Below are positions 12,716-63,263 of a stretch of 64,000 nt of DNA, one piece after another; the stretch's first letter is position 1; every line of letters begins with the position of its first letter. The position numbers and the translations under genes were made by a program. The stretch lies in IMG/VR virus record IMGVR_UViG_3300021057_000274, positions 62,001 to 126,000 of that record. The stretch is one strand, 5' to 3'. The notes below the pieces were generated by a model, which searched no databases, had not been told where the DNA came from, and worked only from the letters and a program-made list of their open reading frames with translations.

Positions 12716-12757
12716 GCCCGCGGTTTACCTCTCGCGTCTCTCATGATATAATTTCTC

Positions 12758-19193: not shown

Positions 19194-19286
19194 TCCTCGG
19201 TACTCTAACGGTAAGAGACCTGGCTGTTAACCAGACGTATCCCGCCACCGAGCGGTATGGAGGTTCGAGTCCTCCCTGAGGAGCCA
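19194..19286 (+). tRNA. tRNA-Asn(GUU) with long variable region
   Basis: Loop CTGTTAA, G73, ~23-nt variable region. Confidence 0.85.
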
Positions 19287-19660: not shown

Positions 19661-19767
19661 TTGTCGTTGAGGGTGGCTCCTCAGGACCCCGAGTAGGACG
19701 GTGAGATCTTGCCGGATCGAGCCGTTTGAAACGGGTCCTGTCGGTGGTTCGATTCCACCACGACTTC
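19661..19767 (+). ncRNA. tRNA-like RNA with expanded anticodon arm
   Basis: gtcgt/acgac, D-like hairpin, ggaccc/gggtcc enclosing ~45 nt, canonical T arm. Confidence 0.5.
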
Positions 19768-20391: not shown

Positions 20392-20465
20392 GGGCTACAA
20401 GCTTTAAGGTGAAGCATCTGGCTCTTACCCAGAAGAACGGGGATCATTACCCCGGTAGCCCACCA
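20392..20465 (+). tRNA. tRNA-Lys(CUU)
   Basis: Loop CTCTTAC, CCA. Confidence 0.9.
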
Positions 20466-22131: not shown

Positions 22132-22180
22132 CACAACGTCCCTCCACGCCTCTCAACGATGCGCACCCAGGAGGGCCTCT

Positions 22181-29304: not shown

Positions 29305-29381
29305 ATGCAACATGCTTGTTTACTTTTTGTCAGCATTTTGATACAATTCTCCTATCATAAACGTTCCGGAGCTCTAGGAAT

Positions 29382-32488: not shown

Positions 32489-32572
32489 TGAATTCGCGAG
32501 AATTCACACAAAAAGAAGAAATTTTGAGAGAATTTGTGATATAATTCTCTTGTACCACTCACGGAGGCGTGG

Positions 32573-55384: not shown

Positions 55385-56374
55385 GTGAGCGGAAATCTTC
55401 GAGTCGGGTTAGTCGGACGAAAGCCAGCCAAGGTCACAGATGACATCACCGACCTCGAGCGCTTGATGCGCGAGGTCGCGAGGGTGATCGCTCACCATGG
55501 AAAGCTCATCGTTGAGGAGAGCACGTACAACTACCTCTTCACTCGCGACAACATCACGAAGATCGGCCTGATCGGTGAGTGGTCATCGCTCAGGGGAGCA
55601 AATCTCGATCTAGCGGTTGTGGTCGGAGGTGACGGCACGATGCTAGAGGCGGCGCGAAATCTCTACAACATTCCGTTGATCGGCGTCAACATGGGGCGAC
55701 TAGGCTTCATCACCGACCTCCCCAGAGTCGGAGCCGCGCAGGTCATTGATCTCATCCTACGCGATTGGGCCGCGTGGGATCGAGAGCGATCGAGCGACGG
55801 TCCTGTTCCAGCATACCCGAAGAACGTCACCCTCGAGAGACGCGCGCTCATCCACGCCGAGAGAGACAACGTCTCTTGGGGAGACGCCCTCAACGACATC
55901 GTCATCTCAAAGACGGGCGGACGCATCCTCGAGTTCAAGGTCTTCGTGGATGAGAAGTTCGCTTACAAGGTTCGAGCCGACGGGTTGATCATCTCCACCC
56001 CGACCGGCTCTACGGCTTACGCCTACTCCGCGGGTGGGTCAATCTTGAGCCCCGGGTCACACACCCTACAACTCATTCCGATGATGCCCCAAACACGATC
56101 CTACAGTCCGCTGATCATCAGCGACAGGGAGTGCGTCAGGGTTGAGATGGTGGCTGGTGAGGCTCGGATCTGGGCCGACGGCATCGATTCGGGAACGATC
56201 GTGCAACCAGATCTGGTCAAGCCAGCGATCTCCCGCAACAGCTCCTGGGTGAACGTGTGTCGCTCTTTTCATGACGCGGTTTTTGTTCACCCCCACTTCT
56301 CGGATCTGGATTACGAGTACTTCCAGACCCTCCGAGAAAAACTCAACTGGCATCTCGAGCCAGGAACACGATGA
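55385..56374 (+). CDS. nadK: NAD+ kinase
   Basis: GGDGT, LNDIV, TPTGSTAY..SAGG. Confidence 0.95.
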   Translation: MSGNLRVGLVGRKPAKVTDDITDLERLMREVARVIAHHGKLIVEESTYNYLFTRDNITKIGLIGEWSSLRGANLDLAVVVGGDGTMLEAARNLYNIPLIGVNMGRLGFITDLPRVGAAQVIDLILRDWAAWDRERSSDGPVPAYPKNVTLERRALIHAERDNVSWGDALNDIVISKTGGRILEFKVFVDEKFAYKVRADGLIISTPTGSTAYAYSAGGSILSPGSHTLQLIPMMPQTRSYSPLIISDRECVRVEMVAGEARIWADGIDSGTIVQPDLVKPAISRNSSWVNVCRSFHDAVFVHPHFSDLDYEYFQTLREKLNWHLEPGTR

Positions 56375-56604
56375 ACAACCAAAAAGAGCAACAGAGTCAG
56401 GTAGCAAACGTCGTCGGTGACGTGATCACCACGGCAGCAGAAGTCGCGATAATCGTCGGATCAAACGCCGCTCAGGCTGGAGAGAAGGCTGCTGAGCTAG
56501 CGGCTGAGCTCGCGAGCGGCGTAGTTGAGGTCGCAAGTGACGTGGCTGGAAATGTCGGTGAAGCTGTGGGCGAAGTGCTCGGCGGCTTGACCGACATCCT
56601 CTAG
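56371..56604 (+). CDS. small acidic Ala/Val-rich protein
   Basis: ATGA coupling. Confidence 0.6.
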   Translation: MNNQKEQQSQVANVVGDVITTAAEVAIIVGSNAAQAGEKAAELAAELASGVVEVASDVAGNVGEAVGEVLGGLTDIL

Positions 56605-56879
56605 TGCCTGTCAACCTGAAGGTCGCAGCAGCCAAAACTCGCGACCTTCTCAAGCAAGCTCAGTACCAGCTCGGTCCGATCTATTCTGGCGACCCCTCCC
56701 TCTCTCTGGAGCACTTGATCGAGATGCTTGACAAGCTCGAGTCTGGAGAAATTGACGGCGAGAAGGGACACCGCTGGCTTGGTTGGGCACAATGCCTCAT
56801 GTGTGCGCGCGACGTCGCCTCTCTAGAAGACTTGAAGATCATCAACAAATCTTCAAAGATCTCGCAAGAAGCCGGATAA
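56604..56879 (+). CDS. hypothetical protein
   Basis: K.HRWLGWAQ motif. Confidence 0.65.
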
Positions 56880-56928
56880 TCTAGCAGTACTGGTATACTT
56901 TTCCACAGGATGTGGTTATAATTCTCCT

Positions 56929-58035
56929 GTGGACCCCAAGATCTATCTGGTAGGCGGCGCTGTACGAGACCACGTGCTGGGAGTTCTCAGCAAGGATCGT
57001 GACTACGTCGTCGTCGGGGCCACTCCCGAGTGGATGATTGAGCGCGGCTTCAAGCGGGTGGGAGCCGACTTCCCGGTTTTCTTGCACCCTGAGACCAGGT
57101 ACGAGTACGCCCTGGCGCGGCAAGAGCGCAAGACCGGCCCAGGCTATCACGGCTTCGACACTCGGTTCGACCCCAGCATCACGCTGGAGGACGATCTGCG
57201 TCGTCGTGACTTGACGATCAACGCGATGGCGATGACCGACGAGGGTGAGATCATCGACCCGTTCGGCGGCTTGACCGACCTGAAAGCTGGCGTGTTGCGT
57301 CACACCAGCGAGGCCTTCGCCGAGGATCCGTTGCGCGTCTTGCGCGTCGCTCGCTTCGCCGCTCGCTATGATTTCACGATCGACCAGACCACCGTCGAGC
57401 TGGCGCGGAAGATCGTCGCTTCAGGCGAGCTGAACTCCCTGCCGCGCGAGCGCTTCTGGACCGAGCTGTGGAAGGGTTTCAACGAGAAGCATCCCTCCAA
57501 GATGATCTCCGCTCTGGAGAACATGAACGCGATTGCGACGGCACCGCTGAACCAGTACTTCGGCAGAAATTTCTCTCTGGACGTCACCGTCGAGAAGATG
57601 AAAGCCGCCGAAAAGAAGTCACTCCCGGCGATCGCCGTTGCAGCTCTGACCCTGGGGCCGATAGACGCCGACAAAGCGAACGAGCTGCGGGTGCCCTCAG
57701 ACGTGTACCGCGTTCATGTCTGGGCCAATAAGCTGGCGATGCTGCACACCCATGACACGGCTGAGAAGATGATCAAGTTCATGGGAAGCATCAAGTATGA
57801 CATCACCAACCCCGACTACTATGCGGCGCTGAGAACTAGCGAGCTGATCGCGTCGCTGATGCTGGACGATCGCAACTTTTCTCGGTGGCACGAGATGAGC
57901 GGCCGAATGGTCATGGTCGACGCCGAGCTGAAGAAGACCAACTTCAAGGAGGTCGCCGAGAACGGGCCGAAGGCGACCATCAGGGAGCGGATTAACGCCG
58001 CTCGCTTAGCCGCGGCCCGGAGAGCTTTCAGCTAA
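56929..58035 (+). CDS. cca: tRNA nucleotidyltransferase (CCA-adding enzyme, class II, no HD domain)
   Basis: [36 protein letters not shown]. Confidence 0.95.
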
Positions 58036-58047
58036 CGGAGACGCCAC

Positions 58048-58251
58048 ATGGATGAGGAGATGTACAAAGAGGTGAGGCAGATGTTTTGGCTCAAGACCTT
58101 CGACTCGGCGGTGCGCTCGGCGGATTGCGCGAACGCGCCCCACGCGACTGCGAGGCTCGCTGGCGAGATCGCTGATGCCGCGTGCAACGAGCTGGACAAG
58201 CGGATGAAGCCGAAGCCGAAGACCGAGCCGCGCGGCACGAAGGCAACCTGA
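58048..58251 (+). CDS. small hypothetical protein
   Basis: GGAG RBS. Confidence 0.6.
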   Translation: MDEEMYKEVRQMFWLKTFDSAVRSADCANAPHATARLAGEIADAACNELDKRMKPKPKTEPRGTKAT

Positions 58252-58529
58252 TGCGCCGCCTCGAGCGAGTCATTCCGGACGCGCCGCGTCCCTTCCGCAT
58301 CTACAACTCAAAGGCGCGTCGCTTCTTCCGCTGGTACCTCTTCAAGTACAAGGACCGCGCGATGAAGCAAGCCTTCTGGATCGCGCACTGGGTACCTGGC
58401 GTCGCGGTCGAGCTGATCGATATTCGCAACGGCAATTGCCACGGCGTCTACGTCGGGCGACGCGTCGGCGAGAAGATCGTCGTTGAGGCGGTCCGTGAAA
58501 CCATCAAAACGCACAAGGAGTTCAAATGA
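58251..58529 (+). CDS. hypothetical protein
   Basis: TGATG coupling. Confidence 0.65.
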   Translation: MRRLERVIPDAPRPFRIYNSKARRFFRWYLFKYKDRAMKQAFWIAHWVPGVAVELIDIRNGNCHGVYVGRRVGEKIVVEAVRETIKTHKEFK

Positions 58530-58909
58530 AAGGTGACCGCAAGCGGCTAGCCGCTCTCAAGAAGGCCCAGCAAGCCGCACAAACTCCCTCCGCTCAGGCC
58601 AAGCGCACTGCCGGCATCCGCGCCTACCACGCTCGGCGCCGAGCTCAGCAAGCTGCCCAGCAACAGCAGGGCGAGCGCCTCGGTAGGGCGCAAGACAAGC
58701 GCCTCGCCGCGGCGCAAGCCGAGCAAGTTCGCTACCCCGTCGCCGAGTTCATTCCCGGCGGCAGGCAGCCCAACCTCGAGCTCGAGGGCGACCGTCCGCG
58801 TCCGGCGACCTCGTCCAAGCTGATCCAGAGCGCCGAGCAGCGCTTGGACCTGGCGAGGGCCCTAGTCGCGACGGTGCACGAGCTCATCAACCCCAAGAAG
58901 CGATCATGA
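58526..58909 (+). CDS. basic hypothetical protein
   Basis: GGAG RBS; Ala/Gln/Arg-rich. Confidence 0.7.
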   Translation: MKGDRKRLAALKKAQQAAQTPSAQAKRTAGIRAYHARRRAQQAAQQQQGERLGRAQDKRLAAAQAEQVRYPVAEFIPGGRQPNLELEGDRPRPATSSKLIQSAEQRLDLARALVATVHELINPKKRS

Positions 58910-59199
58910 AGTCGAAGAAGTCATCCCTCTCGCGAGCGAAGCAGCTCGCGCTAGCCCGCAAGAGCGCCGCGAAGAAGAGCTCTCGCTCTCGTAAAGCTAC
59001 GAGAGCTCTTCGAGGCAAGCCTGCGGCGTCCGTCAGGACGGTGAAGATGACGGACGTCTTCAAGGACCTTCGTCCGAAGATCAACGACCTCCCGGAGACC
59101 GTGCCGGTGCGCATCAACCCGGACGAGATTTACACCGGCTTCTGGCAGACCAACCTCATCCGGCTGACCCGGATGGAGGGAGGAGGCAACCTACCGTGA
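58906..59199 (+). CDS. basic hypothetical protein
   Basis: Lys/Arg/Ser-rich N-terminus. Confidence 0.65.
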   Translation: MKSKKSSLSRAKQLALARKSAAKKSSRSRKATRALRGKPAASVRTVKMTDVFKDLRPKINDLPETVPVRINPDEIYTGFWQTNLIRLTRMEGGGNLP

Positions 59200-59459
59200 G
59201 GATGCGCTGGGCGGTTCCTGTTAGACACGAGTACAACCACCCCCGCAAGCACGAAGAGCTTCTGTGCTACTGGGTACGGTACCCAGATCACAAGAAGCTC
59301 GAGGTGACGAGCGGGAAGTCGCCCTCAAGGTGGACCGAGGTGCCGCTCGTCAACGTCTTTGAGCCCTTGACTCAAGCCTGCGGCTGCTGCCTCCTGAAGA
59401 AGGGTGAAGTGCCAGCAGATCTCCCCGAGAACAAAATCTTAACTCGGACCAAGTTTTAG
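59196..59459 (+). CDS. hypothetical protein
   Basis: GTGA coupling, GGAGG RBS. Confidence 0.65.
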   Translation: MRMRWAVPVRHEYNHPRKHEELLCYWVRYPDHKKLEVTSGKSPSRWTEVPLVNVFEPLTQACGCCLLKKGEVPADLPENKILTRTKF

Positions 59460-59509
59460 TTGCTCAAGCTAGCAACTGTAAATAGAGGAACCACTTACCG
59501 AGGTTCCCT

Positions 59510-60289
59510 ATGAAGGCTTTTGAGATCGGACTTACCGAAGAGCGCCAGAGCGGGCACAGCTTCGTCTACACCTTCATCTCTCCGATGGGATTCTGCATCG
59601 ACGAGGGCATCGCGGAGCAAATCCTCGGAAATCTCGACTCCGACACGATCACTGACTCCGAGTGGAAGAAGGCTCGCGACGCGATCTGTGACTGGAACAC
59701 CTTCTTCTCCTTCGACGCGCACGAGGTCCGCGGCATCATCGAGGAAGCGCTCTCAAACAGCAAGCATCAAATGAATGACAAGGATGAGGACGATCCCGAG
59801 ACCGAGGTCGAGGAGAATCGTCCCAGCCGACATGATCGCTTCAAGCAAGATCCGGTCGAGGACGCGATCGCTGACGCGGAGGCTTTCGAGAAGGACATCA
59901 ATGATGCGGTCGAGGACGCGATCGTCGAGCTAGCCAAGGACGGCAACGAGGCTGAGCTTCATCAGTACGTCCACCATGAGACCCTCAAGGAAGCTGTCAA
60001 GCTCATCCGCTTCCGCGTCCGCAAGAACGCGACGATGGGCTCTCACTACGCGCTCTTCTCTGACGTAGTTTGCTCACGACGCCTCGAGAAGGAGGAGGTC
60101 AAGGAGCTGAAGGAGGAGCTCTCGGGCCAGTTCTCCGACGGCTGGGGTGAGGGAGTCGAGCAACGCTCCTTCGGCGATCGTCACGGCACCGGGCGCGGCG
60201 GACCAGGACTCTTCTACATCAAGCTCTGGTGGTCTAGCCACGGCGAGCACGAGAGAAACTTGCCGAAGTGGAGCATCCAAGAGATCTAA
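59510..60289 (+). CDS. acidic hypothetical late protein
   Basis: TAAATA 59479. Confidence 0.75.
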   Translation: MKAFEIGLTEERQSGHSFVYTFISPMGFCIDEGIAEQILGNLDSDTITDSEWKKARDAICDWNTFFSFDAHEVRGIIEEALSNSKHQMNDKDEDDPETEVEENRPSRHDRFKQDPVEDAIADAEAFEKDINDAVEDAIVELAKDGNEAELHQYVHHETLKEAVKLIRFRVRKNATMGSHYALFSDVVCSRRLEKEEVKELKEELSGQFSDGWGEGVEQRSFGDRHGTGRGGPGLFYIKLWWSSHGEHERNLPKWSIQEI

Positions 60290-60344
60290 TTTTCCATCTC
60301 TTGATTCGGTGATAAAATTGACTCTCTCATCACACGGAGAGTCG

Positions 60345-60995
60345 ATGACGAAGCCACTCAGGGTTGTGAACTTTTTTGCAGGGCCTGGCACCGGAAAGAG
60401 CACCACCGCGACCGCGCTCTTCGCTGAGCTCAAGTACCAGGGCTACAACACCGAATACGTCTCAGAGTACGCGAAGGACGCGACCTGGGAGCGCCGCGGC
60501 GAGAAGGTCTTCAAGTCTCAAGAGTACATCTTCGGCAAGCAACACTTTCGCCTCTCGCGCGTCGCGGAGGAGGTCGACTTCGTCATCACCGACAGCCCGG
60601 TCCTCCTCGCGATCGCGTACACTCCCTCAGACTACTACATGCCCTCTCTCATCAAGACGATCAAGGAGGCGCACGACAACTACGAGAGCATCAACATCCT
60701 GCTCGAGCGCTCAGATCAAAAGGCCTACAATCCTGCCGGTCGCAACCAGACCGAGGCCGAGGCCAGGGAGAAGGACGTCGTGATGAGGGGTGTCGTCGAG
60801 AAGAACTGTCCCTTCTACTACACGATGCCGTTCGGGCGCGTCAACCCGTGGCAAGTGATCGACCTGATGTTCGATCACGGTTGGATCGAGGACGTCAGCA
60901 AGGCGCTCCAAGCTACACAGAGCGCGATCTCAGCCGCGCAAGAAGCCGCCAAATTTTACGAGAGAAGACTCGCCAGGCTCGCCGAGTGCTCCTGA
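60345..60995 (+). CDS. NadR-type (AAA_28) P-loop kinase/ATPase
   Basis: AGPGTGKST, EYVSEYAK, ITDSP. Confidence 0.8.
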   Translation: MTKPLRVVNFFAGPGTGKSTTATALFAELKYQGYNTEYVSEYAKDATWERRGEKVFKSQEYIFGKQHFRLSRVAEEVDFVITDSPVLLAIAYTPSDYYMPSLIKTIKEAHDNYESINILLERSDQKAYNPAGRNQTEAEAREKDVVMRGVVEKNCPFYYTMPFGRVNPWQVIDLMFDHGWIEDVSKALQATQSAISAAQEAAKFYERRLARLAECS

Positions 60996-61180
60996 GGCTA
61001 CGTTGGAATTGTGTCACTTCGTTTTTCAGTGCTTTCAAGACATCGATGTAGAGGCGATCCTTTACTTAGTGTTAGCTGGGATATTTGGAAGCGTGCTTAC
61101 TATGACTTTAAACCGAGAGAAAAGATGAGAATTGAGTAGAAAAGCGGCGAGATCTGTGATATAATCTCTCTACTTTAACT

Positions 61181-61255
61181 GCTCCCTTAGCTCAGCGGCA
61201 GAGTACGGGACTCTAAATCCTAGGGTCGTGGGTTCGAATCCCACAGGGAGCACCA
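61181..61255 (+). tRNA. amber-suppressor tRNA (anticodon CUA)
   Basis: Cloverleaf, loop CTCTAAA, A73, CCA; own TGATATAAT promoter. Confidence 0.88.
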
Positions 61256-61269
61256 CTTAGGAGACCAGG

Positions 61270-61986
61270 TTGACCTGGCTCAAGACGACCGGTAAGCTGT
61301 CGTACGTTGACGAGCGGGCGCTCACGGACGGCAAGGCCTTCAAGAAGACCTGGAAGTCGCGGACCCTCATCGCGAACCTTCCGCGCCACTGTCACCTCGA
61401 CCAGTACTACATCTGGCTGCTCACTCGCCGCTTCGGTCCGTGGGCTGAGCTGACGCGCCCCCTCTTCGGTCTCCACGTCACGATCATTCGCGGTGACGAG
61501 CGCTTCGACCAGAGGTACGAGGAGCTCTGGGGCCGCTGGGCTGGCACGAAGATCGACATCGAGTACAACCCGATCCCGCAGCTCAACTGGCGATTCTGGT
61601 CGCTAGAGGCGCGCTCGAACGAGTTCGGTGAGCTGCGCGAGCGCTTCGGTCTCAACCCGGTCATCAACTTCCACATCACGGTCGCGCGCGCCAACACGAG
61701 CATCATGATGAGCAAGAACGCGCGAAAGCGTGACCCGGAGATGGTGATCCGTGAGTTGCTCAAGCAAATTCCCGGCGGTCGGGGCGGTCGTTACGACTTT
61801 CGCAAGGACCTCGAGCGCACCGCTAGCGAGATCAAGCTCGGATTTCTTCGCGGCACCCAAGCGTGGGATCGCATCATCGAGATCGTGTTCGCGCACCTTC
61901 CCAAGCCCCAGGCGGATTGGGAGGCTCAAGTCGTCGCGTACATTAACATGGTACCTGTCCACCAAGTCATGGAGAAGGCCGCATGA
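61270..61986 (+). CDS. 2H-phosphoesterase-like protein
   Basis: Two HxT motifs: LHVTII and FHITVA. Confidence 0.6.
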   Translation: MTWLKTTGKLSYVDERALTDGKAFKKTWKSRTLIANLPRHCHLDQYYIWLLTRRFGPWAELTRPLFGLHVTIIRGDERFDQRYEELWGRWAGTKIDIEYNPIPQLNWRFWSLEARSNEFGELRERFGLNPVINFHITVARANTSIMMSKNARKRDPEMVIRELLKQIPGGRGGRYDFRKDLERTASEIKLGFLRGTQAWDRIIEIVFAHLPKPQADWEAQVVAYINMVPVHQVMEKAA

Positions 61987-62207
61987 GAGAACGCTACAAG
62001 CTAGTTCGCAGCTCGCTCTCCGCTCACTGCTGCTTCGTCGGGACGGTCATCGACACCGATCGCCCGCACTTTCAAGATAACGCGAAGACGGTGCAGATGG
62101 TCGTGAACGGCGAGCTGCTCTACGAGAGCATCTGCGAGGTTTTCGACGAGAGGGACGGCGAGAAGATCGTCCAAGCTCTCAACCTCCTCGAGAAGCTCAG
62201 GTCGTGA
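61983..62207 (+). CDS. small hypothetical protein
   Basis: ATGA coupling. Confidence 0.65.
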   Translation: MRERYKLVRSSLSAHCCFVGTVIDTDRPHFQDNAKTVQMVVNGELLYESICEVFDERDGEKIVQALNLLEKLRS

Positions 62208-62518
62208 GCGACGTCCTGATCCTCGCCGGGATGTGCTTTCTCGCGATGGTAGCCTACGGCTACTACCGCAAGGTCAAGTATGGTCCGGTGATCTTAAAGG
62301 TTAGAGTGCTCGACTACGTCGACGCCCTCGAGATCCCCTCTCGAGAGGCTCGCAAGCCTGGAAAGCCCCACTACGCCTCTAAGTCCGAGATAAAGCGTTG
62401 GTGCGACTCGAGCGTCGTCATGATCAACGGGCGGCCTCGCGGGTGGCGAGAGCAGGTGAAATTTCCTGTCAACAGCCTGGTCTTCTTCCCGAAGGGGAAG
62501 CGGATCACGATCTTCTAA
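62204..62518 (+). CDS. hypothetical, N-terminal TM, S4-like motif
   Basis: SKSEIKRW....V.ING. Confidence 0.55.
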   Translation: MSDVLILAGMCFLAMVAYGYYRKVKYGPVILKVRVLDYVDALEIPSREARKPGKPHYASKSEIKRWCDSSVVMINGRPRGWREQVKFPVNSLVFFPKGKRITIF

Positions 62519-62715
62519 TGCGCCCCGAGCCCAAGTTTGGCTTCGATTGGCTTGTCGAGGACACGACAGGCAAGCGCTACGTTGTGGTTGATCGCAACTG
62601 GAGCGAGCAAGACGAGACCTGGTGGTACAGGCTCGTCCCGCAATGGTCTCTGCCGCCGGGGAGGTTTCACCGGCTGTACGGGCTCCCCGAAGATTCACTA
62701 AAGGAGGTAACATGA
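62518..62715 (+). CDS. small hypothetical protein
   Basis: TAATG coupling. Confidence 0.55.
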   Translation: MRPEPKFGFDWLVEDTTGKRYVVVDRNWSEQDETWWYRLVPQWSLPPGRFHRLYGLPEDSLKEVT

Positions 62716-63263
62716 TCGAGCAACGAAACGGCGACGTCCTCAACGTCCCCGAGGGCATCATCGTTCACGGATGCAATTGCCTCGGGGTGATGGGCGCCGG
62801 CGTCGCTCTCCAGGTAAAGAGCCGCTTTCCTGAGGCCTTCAAAGCTTACCGCAAGCAATTCGAGTCCTCCTACGTGTTCGGCGTCGACCCGTTCATGAAG
62901 AAGTACCACGAGTACAACGGTCTCAACCTCGGCGACATCATCGCGGTTCAAGTAGGCGAGAAAAAGTGGATCATCAACGCGATGACGCAGGAGAAGTTCG
63001 GCACGGACAAGCGGCACGTCAACTACGAAGCCGTAGCTACCTGCTTCGAGAAGGTCAGTGAGTTCGCGCGATCGGTGCTCGCTGAATTTTATGGACGCGG
63101 AGATGGAACGCTCGACCTCCAGAGAGCGATCGATCACCCTCTCCAGATCTGCTTTCCAGCGATCGGAGCAGGTCTCGCTGGAGGAAACTGGAAGATCATC
63201 GCAAACATCATCGACAACACCGTTCCAGACACCTTCAAGAAGGTCCTCTATGTCTACACGTGA
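62712..63263 (+). CDS. macro domain (ADP-ribose binding/hydrolase) protein
   Basis: GD....IIVHGCNC.G.MGAGVA; FPAIGAGLAGG.W. Confidence 0.92.
   Translation: MIEQRNGDVLNVPEGIIVHGCNCLGVMGAGVALQVKSRFPEAFKAYRKQFESSYVFGVDPFMKKYHEYNGLNLGDIIAVQVGEKKWIINAMTQEKFGTDKRHVNYEAVATCFEKVSEFARSVLAEFYGRGDGTLDLQRAIDHPLQICFPAIGAGLAGGNWKIIANIIDNTVPDTFKKVLYVYT

What the first reader, a model, noticed from the sequence alone, without database searches (positions are those of the whole stretch)
61181..61255. Stand-alone amber-suppressor tRNA in a phage that still uses TAG as stop
Seen: canonical cloverleaf with CUA, its own promoter, far from the tRNA arrays. The loop CTCTAAA is one change from Lys(CUU) CTCTTAA. Many genes here end in TAG and ORFs are intact in code 11, so there is no global recoding. 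Inference: partial, timed suppression used as a regulatory switch.
Basis: partly seen in the sequence, partly recalled or inferred. Interest (0 to 1): 0.72.

Follow-up and report, generated by a model that had tools for sequence, protein, structure and literature searches.

The report
Amber-suppressor tRNA in a jumbo phage
A 389-kb soil phage that uses the normal genetic code carries a well-formed tRNA that should read the UAG stop codon; related giant phages (XacN1, RsoM2USA) are already known to carry such tRNAs, and no phage gene that needs it could be found.

Summary
Window 61181-61255 (+) is a high-scoring tRNA (Rfam 65.4 bits) with anticodon CUA and an encoded CCA. It has its own sigma-70-type promoter and lies 33 kb from the nearest tRNA array. 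Two soil metagenome assemblies reproduce it exactly.

The 389,331-bp genome uses the standard code. TAG ends 74 of 490 called genes, and treating TAG as sense adds 0.7 points of coding density.

The tRNA is not a recent mutant of the phage's own Lys tRNA. With the anticodon masked, its nearest relatives are the two published tRNA-Sup(CUA) genes of Xanthomonas phage XacN1. It belongs to a CUA family that also includes RsoM2USA and at least ten genes in uncultivated phage contigs. Stems in this family change by compensatory substitutions, while the CUCUAAA loop stays fixed.

In 10 of 14 members, this one included, positions 27:43 do not pair. In E. coli that feature raises amber suppression and lets CUA tRNAs read UAA.

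No phage gene carries an in-frame TAG, and every read-through candidate failed, so the "timed regulatory switch" has no target. The inserted amino acid is unresolved (Lys most likely; Tyr or Gln possible).

Verdict: a new member of a known kind whose purpose is still open.

Side finding: an RF1-like gene interrupted by one in-frame TGA at a conserved Trp position.

The parts
60996..61180 (+). AT-rich non-coding spacer (about 42% GC against 58% for the genome) that holds the promoter. It follows the stop of the AAA_28 kinase-like gene (60147-60995).
61137..61165 (+). Sigma-70-type promoter TAGAAA-17 nt-TATAAT with extended -10 (TGaTATAAT, then ctctc). Member of a genome-wide phage promoter class.
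   Evidence: 10 of 12 matches, TG present; 46 TGnTAnAAT sites, 35 intergenic, most followed by tCTC and preceded by a TTTACT-like -35
61181..61255 (+). tRNA(CUA): 7-bp acceptor stem, 4-bp D stem, 5-nt variable loop, canonical T arm, discriminator A, encoded CCA.
61211..61217 (+). Anticodon loop CTCTAAA. The anticodon CTA is at 61213-61215; A37 and A38 follow A36.
   Evidence: the loop is identical in 13 of 14 family members
61206..61222 (+). Anticodon arm. C27 (61206) and A43 (61222) do not pair, leaving a 4-bp anticodon stem (G.U, G-C, G-C, A-U).
   Evidence: 10 of 14 CUA tRNAs against 15 of 130 other tRNAs lack this pair
61259..61264 (+). Ribosome-binding site (AGGAGA) for the next gene, starting 4 nt after the tRNA's CCA. 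No terminator lies between them, so tRNA and gene are probably one transcript.
   Evidence: inference from spacing
61270..61986 (+). Downstream gene (238 aa) with two H-x-T motifs (HVTI, HITV): a 2H phosphoesterase-like protein.

Best explanation
This is a working amber-suppressor tRNA gene. It belongs to a conserved family of tRNA(CUA) genes carried by large soil and plant-associated phages that use the standard code (XacN1, RsoM2USA and uncultivated relatives).

Inferred mechanism:
- Host RNA polymerase transcribes it from an extended -10 promoter, as the first element of a transcript that continues into a 2H phosphoesterase gene.
- It is cut out of that transcript. It needs no CCA addition because CCA is encoded.
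- A host aminoacyl-tRNA synthetase charges it, because the phage encodes none of the relevant ones. Lysine is the most likely residue (A73 plus U35); Tyr or Gln are possible.
- It then competes with release factor 1 at UAG codons.

Its anticodon arm has the features of strong suppressors: loop CUCUAAA and an unpaired 27:43. It may therefore also read UAA at a lower rate.

Because no phage gene contains an in-frame UAG, its effect must be general read-through of UAG-terminated reading frames, host and phage alike, rather than decoding of a recoded gene set.

Shown: the gene, its structure, its promoter class, family membership, covariation, standard code, and absence of in-frame TAG. Inferred: expression, charging, suppression, and the selective benefit.
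For: - tRNA quality: 65.4 bits, ARAGORN call.
- The sequence is confirmed in two assemblies.
- Promoter class.
- Family: with the anticodon masked, the best matches among the 104 other tRNAs of G000, XacN1 and RsoM2USA are XacN1 Sup1 (81%) and Sup2 (79%). The 21-nt variable-plus-T-arm motif occurs in none of the 104 non-CUA tRNAs of the three phages, but in this tRNA and both XacN1 Sup genes.
- Further CUA members lie in IMG/VR contigs of up to 335 kb.
- Covariation: 92% of cells paired, 14 of 21 pairs with changes on both sides, all 7 acceptor pairs compensated, and 0 of 500 shuffles reaching the observed values.
- The 27:43 pair is unpaired in 10 of 14 CUA tRNAs against 15 of 130 others (Fisher p = 2.8e-6). 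The mismatch types differ (C.A, A.C, G.G, G.A, A.A).
- Published E. coli work links this mismatch to stronger UAG read-through and to UAA reading (PMC13092985 and its references 43, 79, 81).
- Standard code in G000, G001 and G002.
- No Lys/Asp/Asn-type, Glu/Gln-type or Tyr/Trp-type synthetase in the genome.
- Bacterial Lys identity is A73 plus U34/U35/U36. Many U35 amber suppressors insert Lys, and changing A73 to G73 shifts them towards Gln (PMC9976931).
- CUA suppressors were already reported in XacN1 (PMC5852040) and RsoM2USA (PMC8504454).
Against: - No expression, charging or suppression data exist. No RNA run was listed.
- TAG is not depleted (15% of stops) and there is no excess of nearby backup stops after TAG. 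An efficient suppressor would therefore extend about 74 phage proteins by a median of 17 residues, which looks costly.
- The isolated RNA's minimum-energy fold is not the cloverleaf but a 7-bp hairpin (tRNA positions 29-35 with 41-47) that buries the anticodon. That pairing is not conserved in the family.
- Most IMG/VR family members were retrieved with a pattern that forced the T arm, so family size and uniformity are partly built in.
- The CUA tRNAs are related to one another, so the Fisher test overstates independence. Pairing at 27:43 in 4 of 14 is also what no constraint at all would give (6 of 16 base combinations pair).
Confidence: 0.72

Rival explanations
1. One reading: partial, timed suppression acts as a regulatory switch that turns on specific phage products (C-terminal extensions or fusions) at a set stage of infection.
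For: The tRNA has its own promoter, apart from the arrays. Eight TAG-ended genes are followed in frame, without another stop, by coding-like sequence, so read-through would make fusion proteins. In recoded phages, suppressor tRNAs are proposed to time late-gene expression (bioRxiv 10.1101/2021.08.26.457843).
Against: Seven of the eight downstream frames have a start codon 0-8 codons after the TAG. The best candidate, the DnaJ-domain gene plus 509 codons, has a stand-alone homologue in RsoM2USA (gene 438) that begins where this phage's GTG lies. The 678-codon case aligns to a PHROG from its own N-terminus. The fraction of such in-frame neighbours is 10.8% for TAG, against 4.3% for TGA and 16% for TAA. 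Extension lengths after TAG equal those after other stops. The XacN1 authors found no targets either (PMC5852040).
Confidence: 0.1
2. Stop-codon handling, or host-directed read-through. The tRNA keeps ribosomes moving at UAG when host RF1 is scarce or disabled, or it deliberately extends host proteins. In this reading it is one of several termination and rescue parts that these phages carry: an RF1-like factor, tmRNA, and tRNA(UCA).
For: G000 also encodes a domain-1-less RF1-like factor with a PxT-type motif and GGQ. G001 carries tRNA(CUA), tRNA(UCA), tmRNA and the RF1-like gene. tmRNA genes lie within a few kb of the CUA tRNA in L020, L023 and L026. The phage ends 43% of its genes in TAG or TAA, the RF1-readable stops.
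Against: The host is unknown, so host stop usage and RF1 supply cannot be compared. XacN1, RsoM2USA and G002 have the tRNA but no RF-1 domain gene, so the parts are not strictly linked. There are no functional data.
Confidence: 0.12
3. Evolutionary way-station: a suppressor acquired before a future TAG reassignment, as proposed for a standard-code relative of recoded gut phages.
For: A standard-code Agate phage with a newly acquired TGA suppressor was read this way (bioRxiv 10.1101/2021.08.26.457843).
Against: TAG is not depleted here (15% of stops), whereas stop-codon loss and low GC were proposed as the precursor state; this genome is 58% GC. The family spans phages of 32-58% GC with fully diverged acceptor stems. 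That points to long-term maintenance in standard-code genomes, not a transient state.
Confidence: 0.04
4. Not a decoder at all: a tRNA-shaped RNA used as a processing signal for the downstream mRNA, a decoy for a host anticodon nuclease, or a decaying pseudogene.
For: It sits 14 nt upstream of a 2H phosphoesterase gene, near a CCA-adding enzyme and a Macro-domain protein, in an RNA-repair-like neighbourhood. The ends of the anticodon stem are loosely paired across the family.
Against: The CUA anticodon and the whole CUCUAAA loop are kept in 13 of 14 diverged members, while the stems co-vary. The acceptor, D and T stems are 94-100% paired. An encoded CCA and a full set of tertiary-contact bases point to a chargeable tRNA.
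Confidence: 0.02

Closest known systems
tRNA-Sup(CUA) genes of Xanthomonas phage XacN1 (AP018399.1: 36047-36122 and 36130-36205; PMC5852040)
   Same: CUA anticodon in loop CUCUAAA, the same D arm, and an identical 23-nt variable loop plus T arm. Identity is 79-81% with the anticodon masked. 27:43 is unpaired. The host genome is a jumbo myovirus with the standard code and dozens of tRNAs, and in-silico read-through found no target genes there either.
   Different: XacN1 has two tandem copies inside a tRNA array in its 66-kb terminal repeat, with A73 and G73 discriminators. Here there is one copy, alone, with its own promoter, ahead of a 2H phosphoesterase gene. The acceptor and anticodon stems differ completely. 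XacN1 also has an unpaired 31:39. The XacN1 paper counts only 18 amber stops in the genome (PMC5852040); here there are 74.
Suppressor tRNA(CUA) of Ralstonia phage RsoM2USA (MG752970.1, about 55.7 kb; PMC8504454)
   Same: CUA in loop CUCUAAA, in a standard-code jumbo phage. That phage shares protein homologues with this one: CCA-adding enzyme at 58% identity, the 2H protein, and gene 438.
   Different: The RsoM2USA tRNA is 78 nt with a 7-nt variable region, a fully paired 5-bp anticodon stem, G73, and a different T stem. Its location is not syntenic.
Suppressor tRNAs of stop-codon-recoded phages (Lak, crAss-like, Agate, Jade; bioRxiv 10.1101/2021.08.26.457843)
   Same: A phage-encoded tRNA cognate to a stop codon, sometimes accompanied by a release-factor gene.
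   Different: Those phages carry many in-frame TAG or TGA codons in late genes and show low code-11 coding density. This genome has neither. TAG-recoded phages carry RF2, whereas this phage carries an RF1-like gene.
Laboratory E. coli amber suppressors with an unpaired 27:43 (tRNAThr2 G27-A43; tRNATrp CUA 27-43 mutants of Schultz and Yarus, as cited in PMC13092985)
   Same: A CUA anticodon, loop CUCUAAA, and a mismatch at the top of the anticodon stem.
   Different: Those are engineered or selected mutants of host tRNAs with known charging. This is a natural phage gene of unknown charging, and its decoding has not been measured.

Membership tests
tRNA (Rfam RF00005) | Covariance-model score above the gathering threshold (29 bits) | tested here: met
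   65.4 bits, E 5.6e-12, full model 1-71
tRNA (Rfam RF00005) | Cloverleaf supported by compensatory changes among relatives | tested here: met
   14 sequences: 92% of cells paired, 14 of 21 pairs changed on both sides, 0 of 500 shuffles as high; slid controls pair in 26-45% of cells
Amber-suppressor tRNA | Anticodon 5'-CUA-3' at positions 34-36 of a 7-nt loop with U33 | tested here: met
   Loop CTCTAAA at 61211-61217; confirmed in two assemblies
Amber-suppressor tRNA | Is expressed, aminoacylated, and inserts an amino acid at UAG | not testable with these tools
   No RNA run was listed. Only a promoter of the phage's common class and an encoded CCA speak for expression.
Jumbo-phage tRNA-Sup(CUA) family (XacN1 / RsoM2USA type) | Closest relatives, anticodon aside, are other phage CUA tRNAs | tested here: met
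   The two top hits among 104 tRNAs from unbiased sources are XacN1 Sup1 and Sup2. The shared 21-nt motif is absent from all 104 non-CUA tRNAs.
Jumbo-phage tRNA-Sup(CUA) family (XacN1 / RsoM2USA type) | Carried by a large phage genome that uses the standard code | tested here: met
   389 kb. Density is 0.857 under code 11 and 0.864 with TAG as sense. 74 genes end in TAG. The same holds for G001 and G002.
Stop-codon-recoded phage (code 15, TAG = sense) | In-frame TAG codons in genes and a clear gain in coding density when TAG is read as sense | tested here: not met
   The gain is 0.7 points, no more than for TAA. No TAG-interrupted gene was found.
tRNA-Pyl (ARAGORN's label) | The atypical tRNA-Pyl shape (short D loop without GG, 3-nt variable loop, 6-bp anticodon stem, no T-psi-C-R-A), as recalled from general knowledge | tested here: not met
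   The sequence has the GG of the D loop, a 5-nt variable loop, GTTCGAATC in the T loop and a 4-5-bp anticodon stem. pylS was not searched.
   A73 and U35 are present; positions 34 and 36 are C and A. A73 plus U35 also fits Tyr. Three family members have G73, which leans towards Gln.
   The phage's own Lys(CUU) is dissimilar, with an odd T loop. XacN1 Lys(CUU) at 78% and Lys(UUU) at 72% rank just behind the CUA tRNAs, level with an Arg and a Leu tRNA.

The most novel reading that the evidence does not exclude
The CUA tRNAs of standard-code jumbo phages are a dedicated, tuned class of strong suppressors. The unpaired 27:43, sometimes with an unpaired 31:39, lets them read both UAG and UAA. Together with a UGA-gated RF1-like factor, and with tmRNA and tRNA(UCA) in relatives, they would form a phage toolkit that re-sets how the infected cell handles stop codons without changing the phage's own code.
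Probability: 0.2. Interest if true: 0.7.

Novelty: new member of a known kind. Interest (0 to 1): 0.4.

Why it matters
Why phages that use the standard code keep a tRNA that reads a stop codon is an open question. It was raised for XacN1 in 2018 and has not been answered.

This case adds three things:
- The tRNAs form one conserved family across phages of 32-58% GC, so they are maintained by selection and are not accidents.
- The family tends to lack the 27:43 pair, a feature that E. coli genetics ties to stronger suppression and wobble to UAA. This gives a concrete, testable prediction.
- A careful search again finds no dependent gene. That points away from gene-specific switching and towards a general effect on termination.

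Two isolated phages, XacN1 and RsoM2USA, make the question testable at the bench.

Tried and rejected
- Close relatives and synteny. Megablast of the locus against GenBank phages found nothing. Protein-pattern and exact-DNA scans of IMG/VR found no near relative. tblastn of seven neighbouring proteins against every fetched locus showed no shared gene order around any CUA tRNA.
- Paralogy. No other tRNA of the genome is close; the best is Val(UAC) at 73-74%.
- Read-through targets. The DnaJ-domain gene (genome 148165-148992) plus 509 in-frame codons was rejected, because the RsoM2USA homologue is a separate gene starting at the position of this phage's GTG. Gene 161315-162496 (-) plus 678 codons was rejected, because the PHROG match starts at residue 13 of the extension and a GGAG site precedes the GTG. 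Six further pairs have starts 0-7 codons after the TAG.
- Adaptation of phage genes to suppression. There is no excess of nearby backup stops, no skew in the identity of the next stop, and no clear +4 base bias.
- Phage-encoded charging enzyme. No PF00152, PF00749 or PF00579 domain was found.
- Expression. No RNA run was listed.
- Bacterial origin. The CUA-plus-T-arm pattern occurs in only two MAG contigs out of 185,579 species genomes.
- Host flanks. IMG/VR labels the record 'provirus', but GC and gene density are uniform from end to end and no end repeats were seen.
- tRNA(UCA) next to the G000 RF1-like gene. None was found by ARAGORN or Rfam.

Full report
OBSERVATION

Window 61181-61255 (+) holds a 75-nt tRNA gene. 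ARAGORN reports anticodon cta. Its 'Pyl' label is only its default name for CUA. Rfam's tRNA model scores 65.4 bits (E 5.6e-12), the second best of the 36 tRNA matches in the window.

Read directly, the gene has:
- a 7-bp acceptor stem (GCTCCCT/AGGGAGC);
- U8 and A14, a 4-bp D stem and the GG of the D loop;
- anticodon loop CTCTAAA, with CTA at 61213-61215;
- a 5-nt variable loop and a T arm with GTTCGAATC;
- discriminator A and an encoded CCA.

The only departures from a textbook cloverleaf are a C27.A43 mismatch at the top of the anticodon stem and two G.U pairs. Folded alone with RNA parameters, the minimum-energy structure replaces the anticodon arm with a 7-bp hairpin that buries the anticodon. 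That pairing is not conserved in relatives, and I treat it as a caveat only.

Logan contigs from two soil-metagenome DNA runs cover window 60500-62500 with no difference. The anticodon is therefore not an assembly slip, although these runs may be the source samples.

GENOME AND CODE

The window is bases 62001-126000 of a 389,331-bp virus record with 57.8% GC. CheckV rates it 98% complete and IMG/VR labels it 'provirus'. I saw no compositional host flank and no end repeats.

The genome has 48 tRNA genes: arrays at 71.5-90 kb and 372.7-374.8 kb, and this one alone at 123,181. In the window the nearest tRNA is 33 kb away.

A codon-usage-based gene call gives 490 genes at 87.6% density, ending in TGA 279 times, TAA 137 times and TAG 74 times. 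With a cruder longest-ORF measure, density is 0.857 under code 11 and 0.864 if TAG is sense. The gain is no larger than for the other stops.

PROMOTER AND TRANSCRIPT

The consensus scan finds TAGAAA-17-TATAAT with an upstream TG at 61137-61165.

Across the genome there are 46 TGnTAnAAT sites. Thirty-five are intergenic, although only about 12% of the genome is. Most share a TTTACT-like -35 at 17 nt and tCTC just downstream.

The tRNA's site (TGATATAATctctc) fits this class, except that its -35 is weaker. An AGGAGA ribosome-binding site starts 4 nt after the CCA, and the next ORF starts at 61270 with no terminator between. That ORF has two H-x-T motifs and a weak 2H phosphoesterase match.

So the tRNA is probably the first element of a short operon. 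Nearby lie a CCA-adding enzyme (56929-58035), an NAD kinase, an AAA_28 kinase-like protein and a Macro-domain protein. Expression timing is inference only, because no RNA run was listed.

WHERE THE tRNA COMES FROM

It is not a recent copy of any other tRNA in the genome; the best match is Val(UAC) at 73-74%. The phage's own Lys(CUU) tRNA is very different, with loop CTCTTAC and an unusual T loop.

The literature shows that CUA suppressors have already been reported in standard-code jumbo phages:
- XacN1 has two, and its authors found no target genes by in-silico read-through (PMC5852040).
- RsoM2USA has one (PMC8504454).
- Atu_ph07 has a UCA suppressor (PMC6102473).

This phage is a distant relative of RsoM2USA: the CCA-adding enzyme is 58% identical over its N-terminal 200 residues, and other proteins match.

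Aligned with the XacN1 genes, this tRNA shares the D arm, the whole anticodon loop and an identical 23-nt variable loop plus T arm. The acceptor and anticodon stems are entirely different but still paired.

With the anticodon masked, XacN1 Sup1 (81%) and Sup2 (79%) are its best matches among the 104 other tRNAs of the three phages. The 21-nt variable-plus-T-arm motif occurs in none of the 104 non-CUA tRNAs.

Pattern scans of IMG/VR found further CUA tRNAs in contigs of 12-335 kb. These scans fixed the T arm, so the uniformity of that arm among those hits is built in. A scan of 185,579 species genomes found the pattern in only two MAG contigs.

On the 14-sequence alignment the cloverleaf holds in 92% of cells. 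Fourteen of 21 pairs show changes on both sides, including all seven acceptor pairs, and no shuffle of 500 reaches these values.

The CUA anticodon is therefore old and maintained while the stems turn over. That is the signature of a selected, functional tRNA.

A FAMILY TRAIT IN THE ANTICODON STEM

Positions 27:43 do not form a standard pair in 10 of the 14 CUA tRNAs, including this one. Among the other tRNAs of the same loci the figure is 15 of 130 (Fisher p = 2.8e-6). Only 3 of 14 have a full 5-bp stem, against 101 of 130.

The mismatch types differ (C.A, A.C, G.G, G.A, A.A), so the trait is not one inherited substitution. Related sequences still inflate the test. Pairing in 4 of 14 is also what a complete lack of constraint would give.

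In bacteria overall, 5.6% of tRNAs have a 4-bp anticodon stem (PMC13092985). That paper summarises older E. coli work. A natural G27-A43 mismatch makes a tRNAThr-derived CUA suppressor more efficient. Unpairing 27-43 in tRNATrp(CUA) lets it read UAA through C:A wobble.

The prediction follows that this family is tuned for strong suppression and may reach UAA. It is untested.

WHICH AMINO ACID

The genome encodes no Lys/Asp/Asn-type, Glu/Gln-type or Tyr/Trp-type synthetase, so a host enzyme must charge the tRNA.

The identity sets in PMC9976931 are:
- bacterial Lys: A73 with U34, U35, U36;
- Tyr: A73 with G34, U35;
- Gln: G73, U1-A72, G2-C71, G3-C70, G10, U35, G36;
- Trp: G73, A1-U72, CCA.

This tRNA has A73, G1-C72, C2-G71 and U35. 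That fits Lys or Tyr better than Gln or Trp. The same review notes that several U35 amber suppressors insert Lys, and that A73-to-G73 shifts them towards Gln.

In the family the discriminator is A in ten members, G in three and T in one, and the acceptor stems vary freely. Members may therefore not all carry the same residue. I rank Lys first without calling it shown.

IS THERE A TARGET?

For every called gene I followed the frame past the stop. Eight of the 74 TAG-ended genes run on for at least 40 coding-like codons, against 12 of 279 for TGA and 22 of 137 for TAA.

In seven of these, a start codon lies 0-8 codons after the TAG. They are simply neighbouring genes in the same frame.

The two longest cases were checked further:
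- The 678-codon extension matches a PHROG from its own residue 13, and a GGAG site precedes a GTG.
- The 509-codon extension after a DnaJ-domain gene has a stand-alone homologue in RsoM2USA (gene 438, E 1e-80) that begins where this phage's GTG lies.

Extension lengths after TAG (median 17 codons; 35% within 10 codons) match those after TGA and TAA. The phage has neither exploited nor guarded against read-through in any visible way.

G001 (335 kb, 42% GC) and G002 (290 kb, 32% GC) also carry CUA tRNAs. Both are standard-code by the same density test, with TAG at 12% and 7% of stops.

The 'regulatory switch' idea thus has no identified target. It cannot be excluded, but nothing supports it.

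SIDE FINDING RELEVANT TO MECHANISM

Outside the window, at genome 157,084-157,755, lies a release-factor gene that lacks domain 1. Its best match is RF1: 167 bits against 99 for RF2, with a PPT motif at the PxT position and an intact GGQ.

It is interrupted by a single in-frame TGA in a UGA-C context. After the TGA the next in-frame start codon is 84 codons away, yet coding potential continues. This is the only such case in the genome for any stop codon.

In uninterrupted homologues the TGA aligns with a conserved Trp. More than 5,000 short RF1-like homologues exist in metagenomes, and many are called from just after this point.

G001 has the same gene with an in-frame TGA about ten residues earlier. 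It also has a tRNA(UCA) 1.7 kb away, plus a tmRNA. G000 has no tRNA(UCA). XacN1, RsoM2USA and G002 lack an RF-1 domain gene.

The CUA tRNA cannot read UGA, so this is not its target. An RF1-type factor would, however, compete with it at UAG. tmRNA genes also sit within a few kb of CUA tRNAs in three contigs.

These parts suggest, but do not show, that these phages adjust stop-codon handling in the infected cell.

VERDICT

The gene is real and very probably a functional amber suppressor. It is a new member of a kind already described in XacN1 and RsoM2USA.

It is unsupported on the Lys origin and on the regulatory switch.

What is new here is the family-level picture: conservation with covariation, and the loose 27:43 pair. 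So is the pairing with a UGA-interrupted RF1-like gene in two genomes. The purpose of such tRNAs remains open.

Noticed in passing
outside the window: genome G000 157,084-157,755 (+) = L021:1207-1878: Domain-1-less RF1-like release-factor gene (PPT motif, GGQ intact) interrupted by one in-frame TGA (L021:1342-1344, context GGT TGA C). The TGA aligns with a conserved Trp in uninterrupted homologues. It is the only in-frame stop with coding potential on both sides in the whole genome. More than 5,000 short homologues exist in metagenomes.
   Followed up: partly
G001 (IMG/VR, 335,552 bp): L028:1195-1860 (+) and L040:5422-5493 (-): The same RF1-like gene with an in-frame TGA (L028:1294-1296) about ten residues earlier than in G000. 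A tRNA with anticodon UCA (opal suppressor) lies 1.7 kb away. The genome also has a tmRNA and a tRNA(CUA), yet looks standard-code (TGA ends 146 of 372 ORFs).
   Followed up: partly
L020:7834-8163, L023:5843-6231, L026:6716-7090: tmRNA genes lie 1-3 kb from the CUA tRNA in three uncultivated phage contigs. G000 itself has no tmRNA.
   Followed up: no
whole genome G000; in the window e.g. 12744-12752, 29339-29347, 32537-32545, 61157-61165: A phage promoter class: TTTACT-like -35, 17-nt spacer, extended -10 TGATAyAAT, then tCTC. There are 46 TGnTAnAAT sites, 35 of them intergenic, most just upstream of a gene start.
   Followed up: partly
window 55385-63263: The gene block around the tRNA looks like RNA maintenance plus NAD metabolism: NAD kinase (55385-56374), CCA-adding enzyme (56929-58035), AAA_28 kinase-like (60147-60995), 2H phosphoesterase with two HxT motifs (61270-61986) and a Macro-domain protein (62622-63263).
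   Followed up: partly
window 22140-22176 (+): Rfam abiF RNA motif (RF03085, 48 bits against a gathering score of 37) between tRNA-Gln(CUG) and tRNA-Phe in the tRNA array.
   Followed up: no
window 20392-20465 (+): The phage tRNA-Lys(CUU) has loop CTCTTAC and a non-canonical T loop (GGGGATCATTACCCC, no TTCGA). The same oddities occur in the RsoM2USA Lys(CUU) tRNA, so they are conserved.
   Followed up: no
window 19194-19286 (+) and 19695-19767 (+): A 93-nt tRNA-Asn(GUU), about 18 nt longer than its neighbour copy. Also a 73-nt 'tRNA-Ser(UGA)' without a long variable arm that ARAGORN calls but Rfam does not list at its gathering score.
   Followed up: no
outside the window: genome G000 374,601-374,674 (L003:4602-4675): One of the two phage tRNA-Trp(CCA) genes has an unpaired C31.A39 at the bottom of its anticodon stem. 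Its anticodon arm (GGAGC CTCCAAA ACTCT) resembles that of several CUA family members (e.g. L016b GGAGT CTCTAAA ACTCT).
   Followed up: no
L029:1520-1595 (-) and L030:1940-2016 (+): The only two hits for the CUA-plus-T-arm pattern in 185,579 species genomes are contigs of two 'Candidatus Obscuribacterales' MAGs. They may be phage contigs binned with the bacteria.
   Followed up: no
window 61209-61227: In isolation the RNA prefers a 7-bp hairpin (tRNA positions 29-35 with 41-47) that pairs the anticodon CUA with UAG of the 3' stem and variable loop. The pairing is not conserved in the family.
   Followed up: partly
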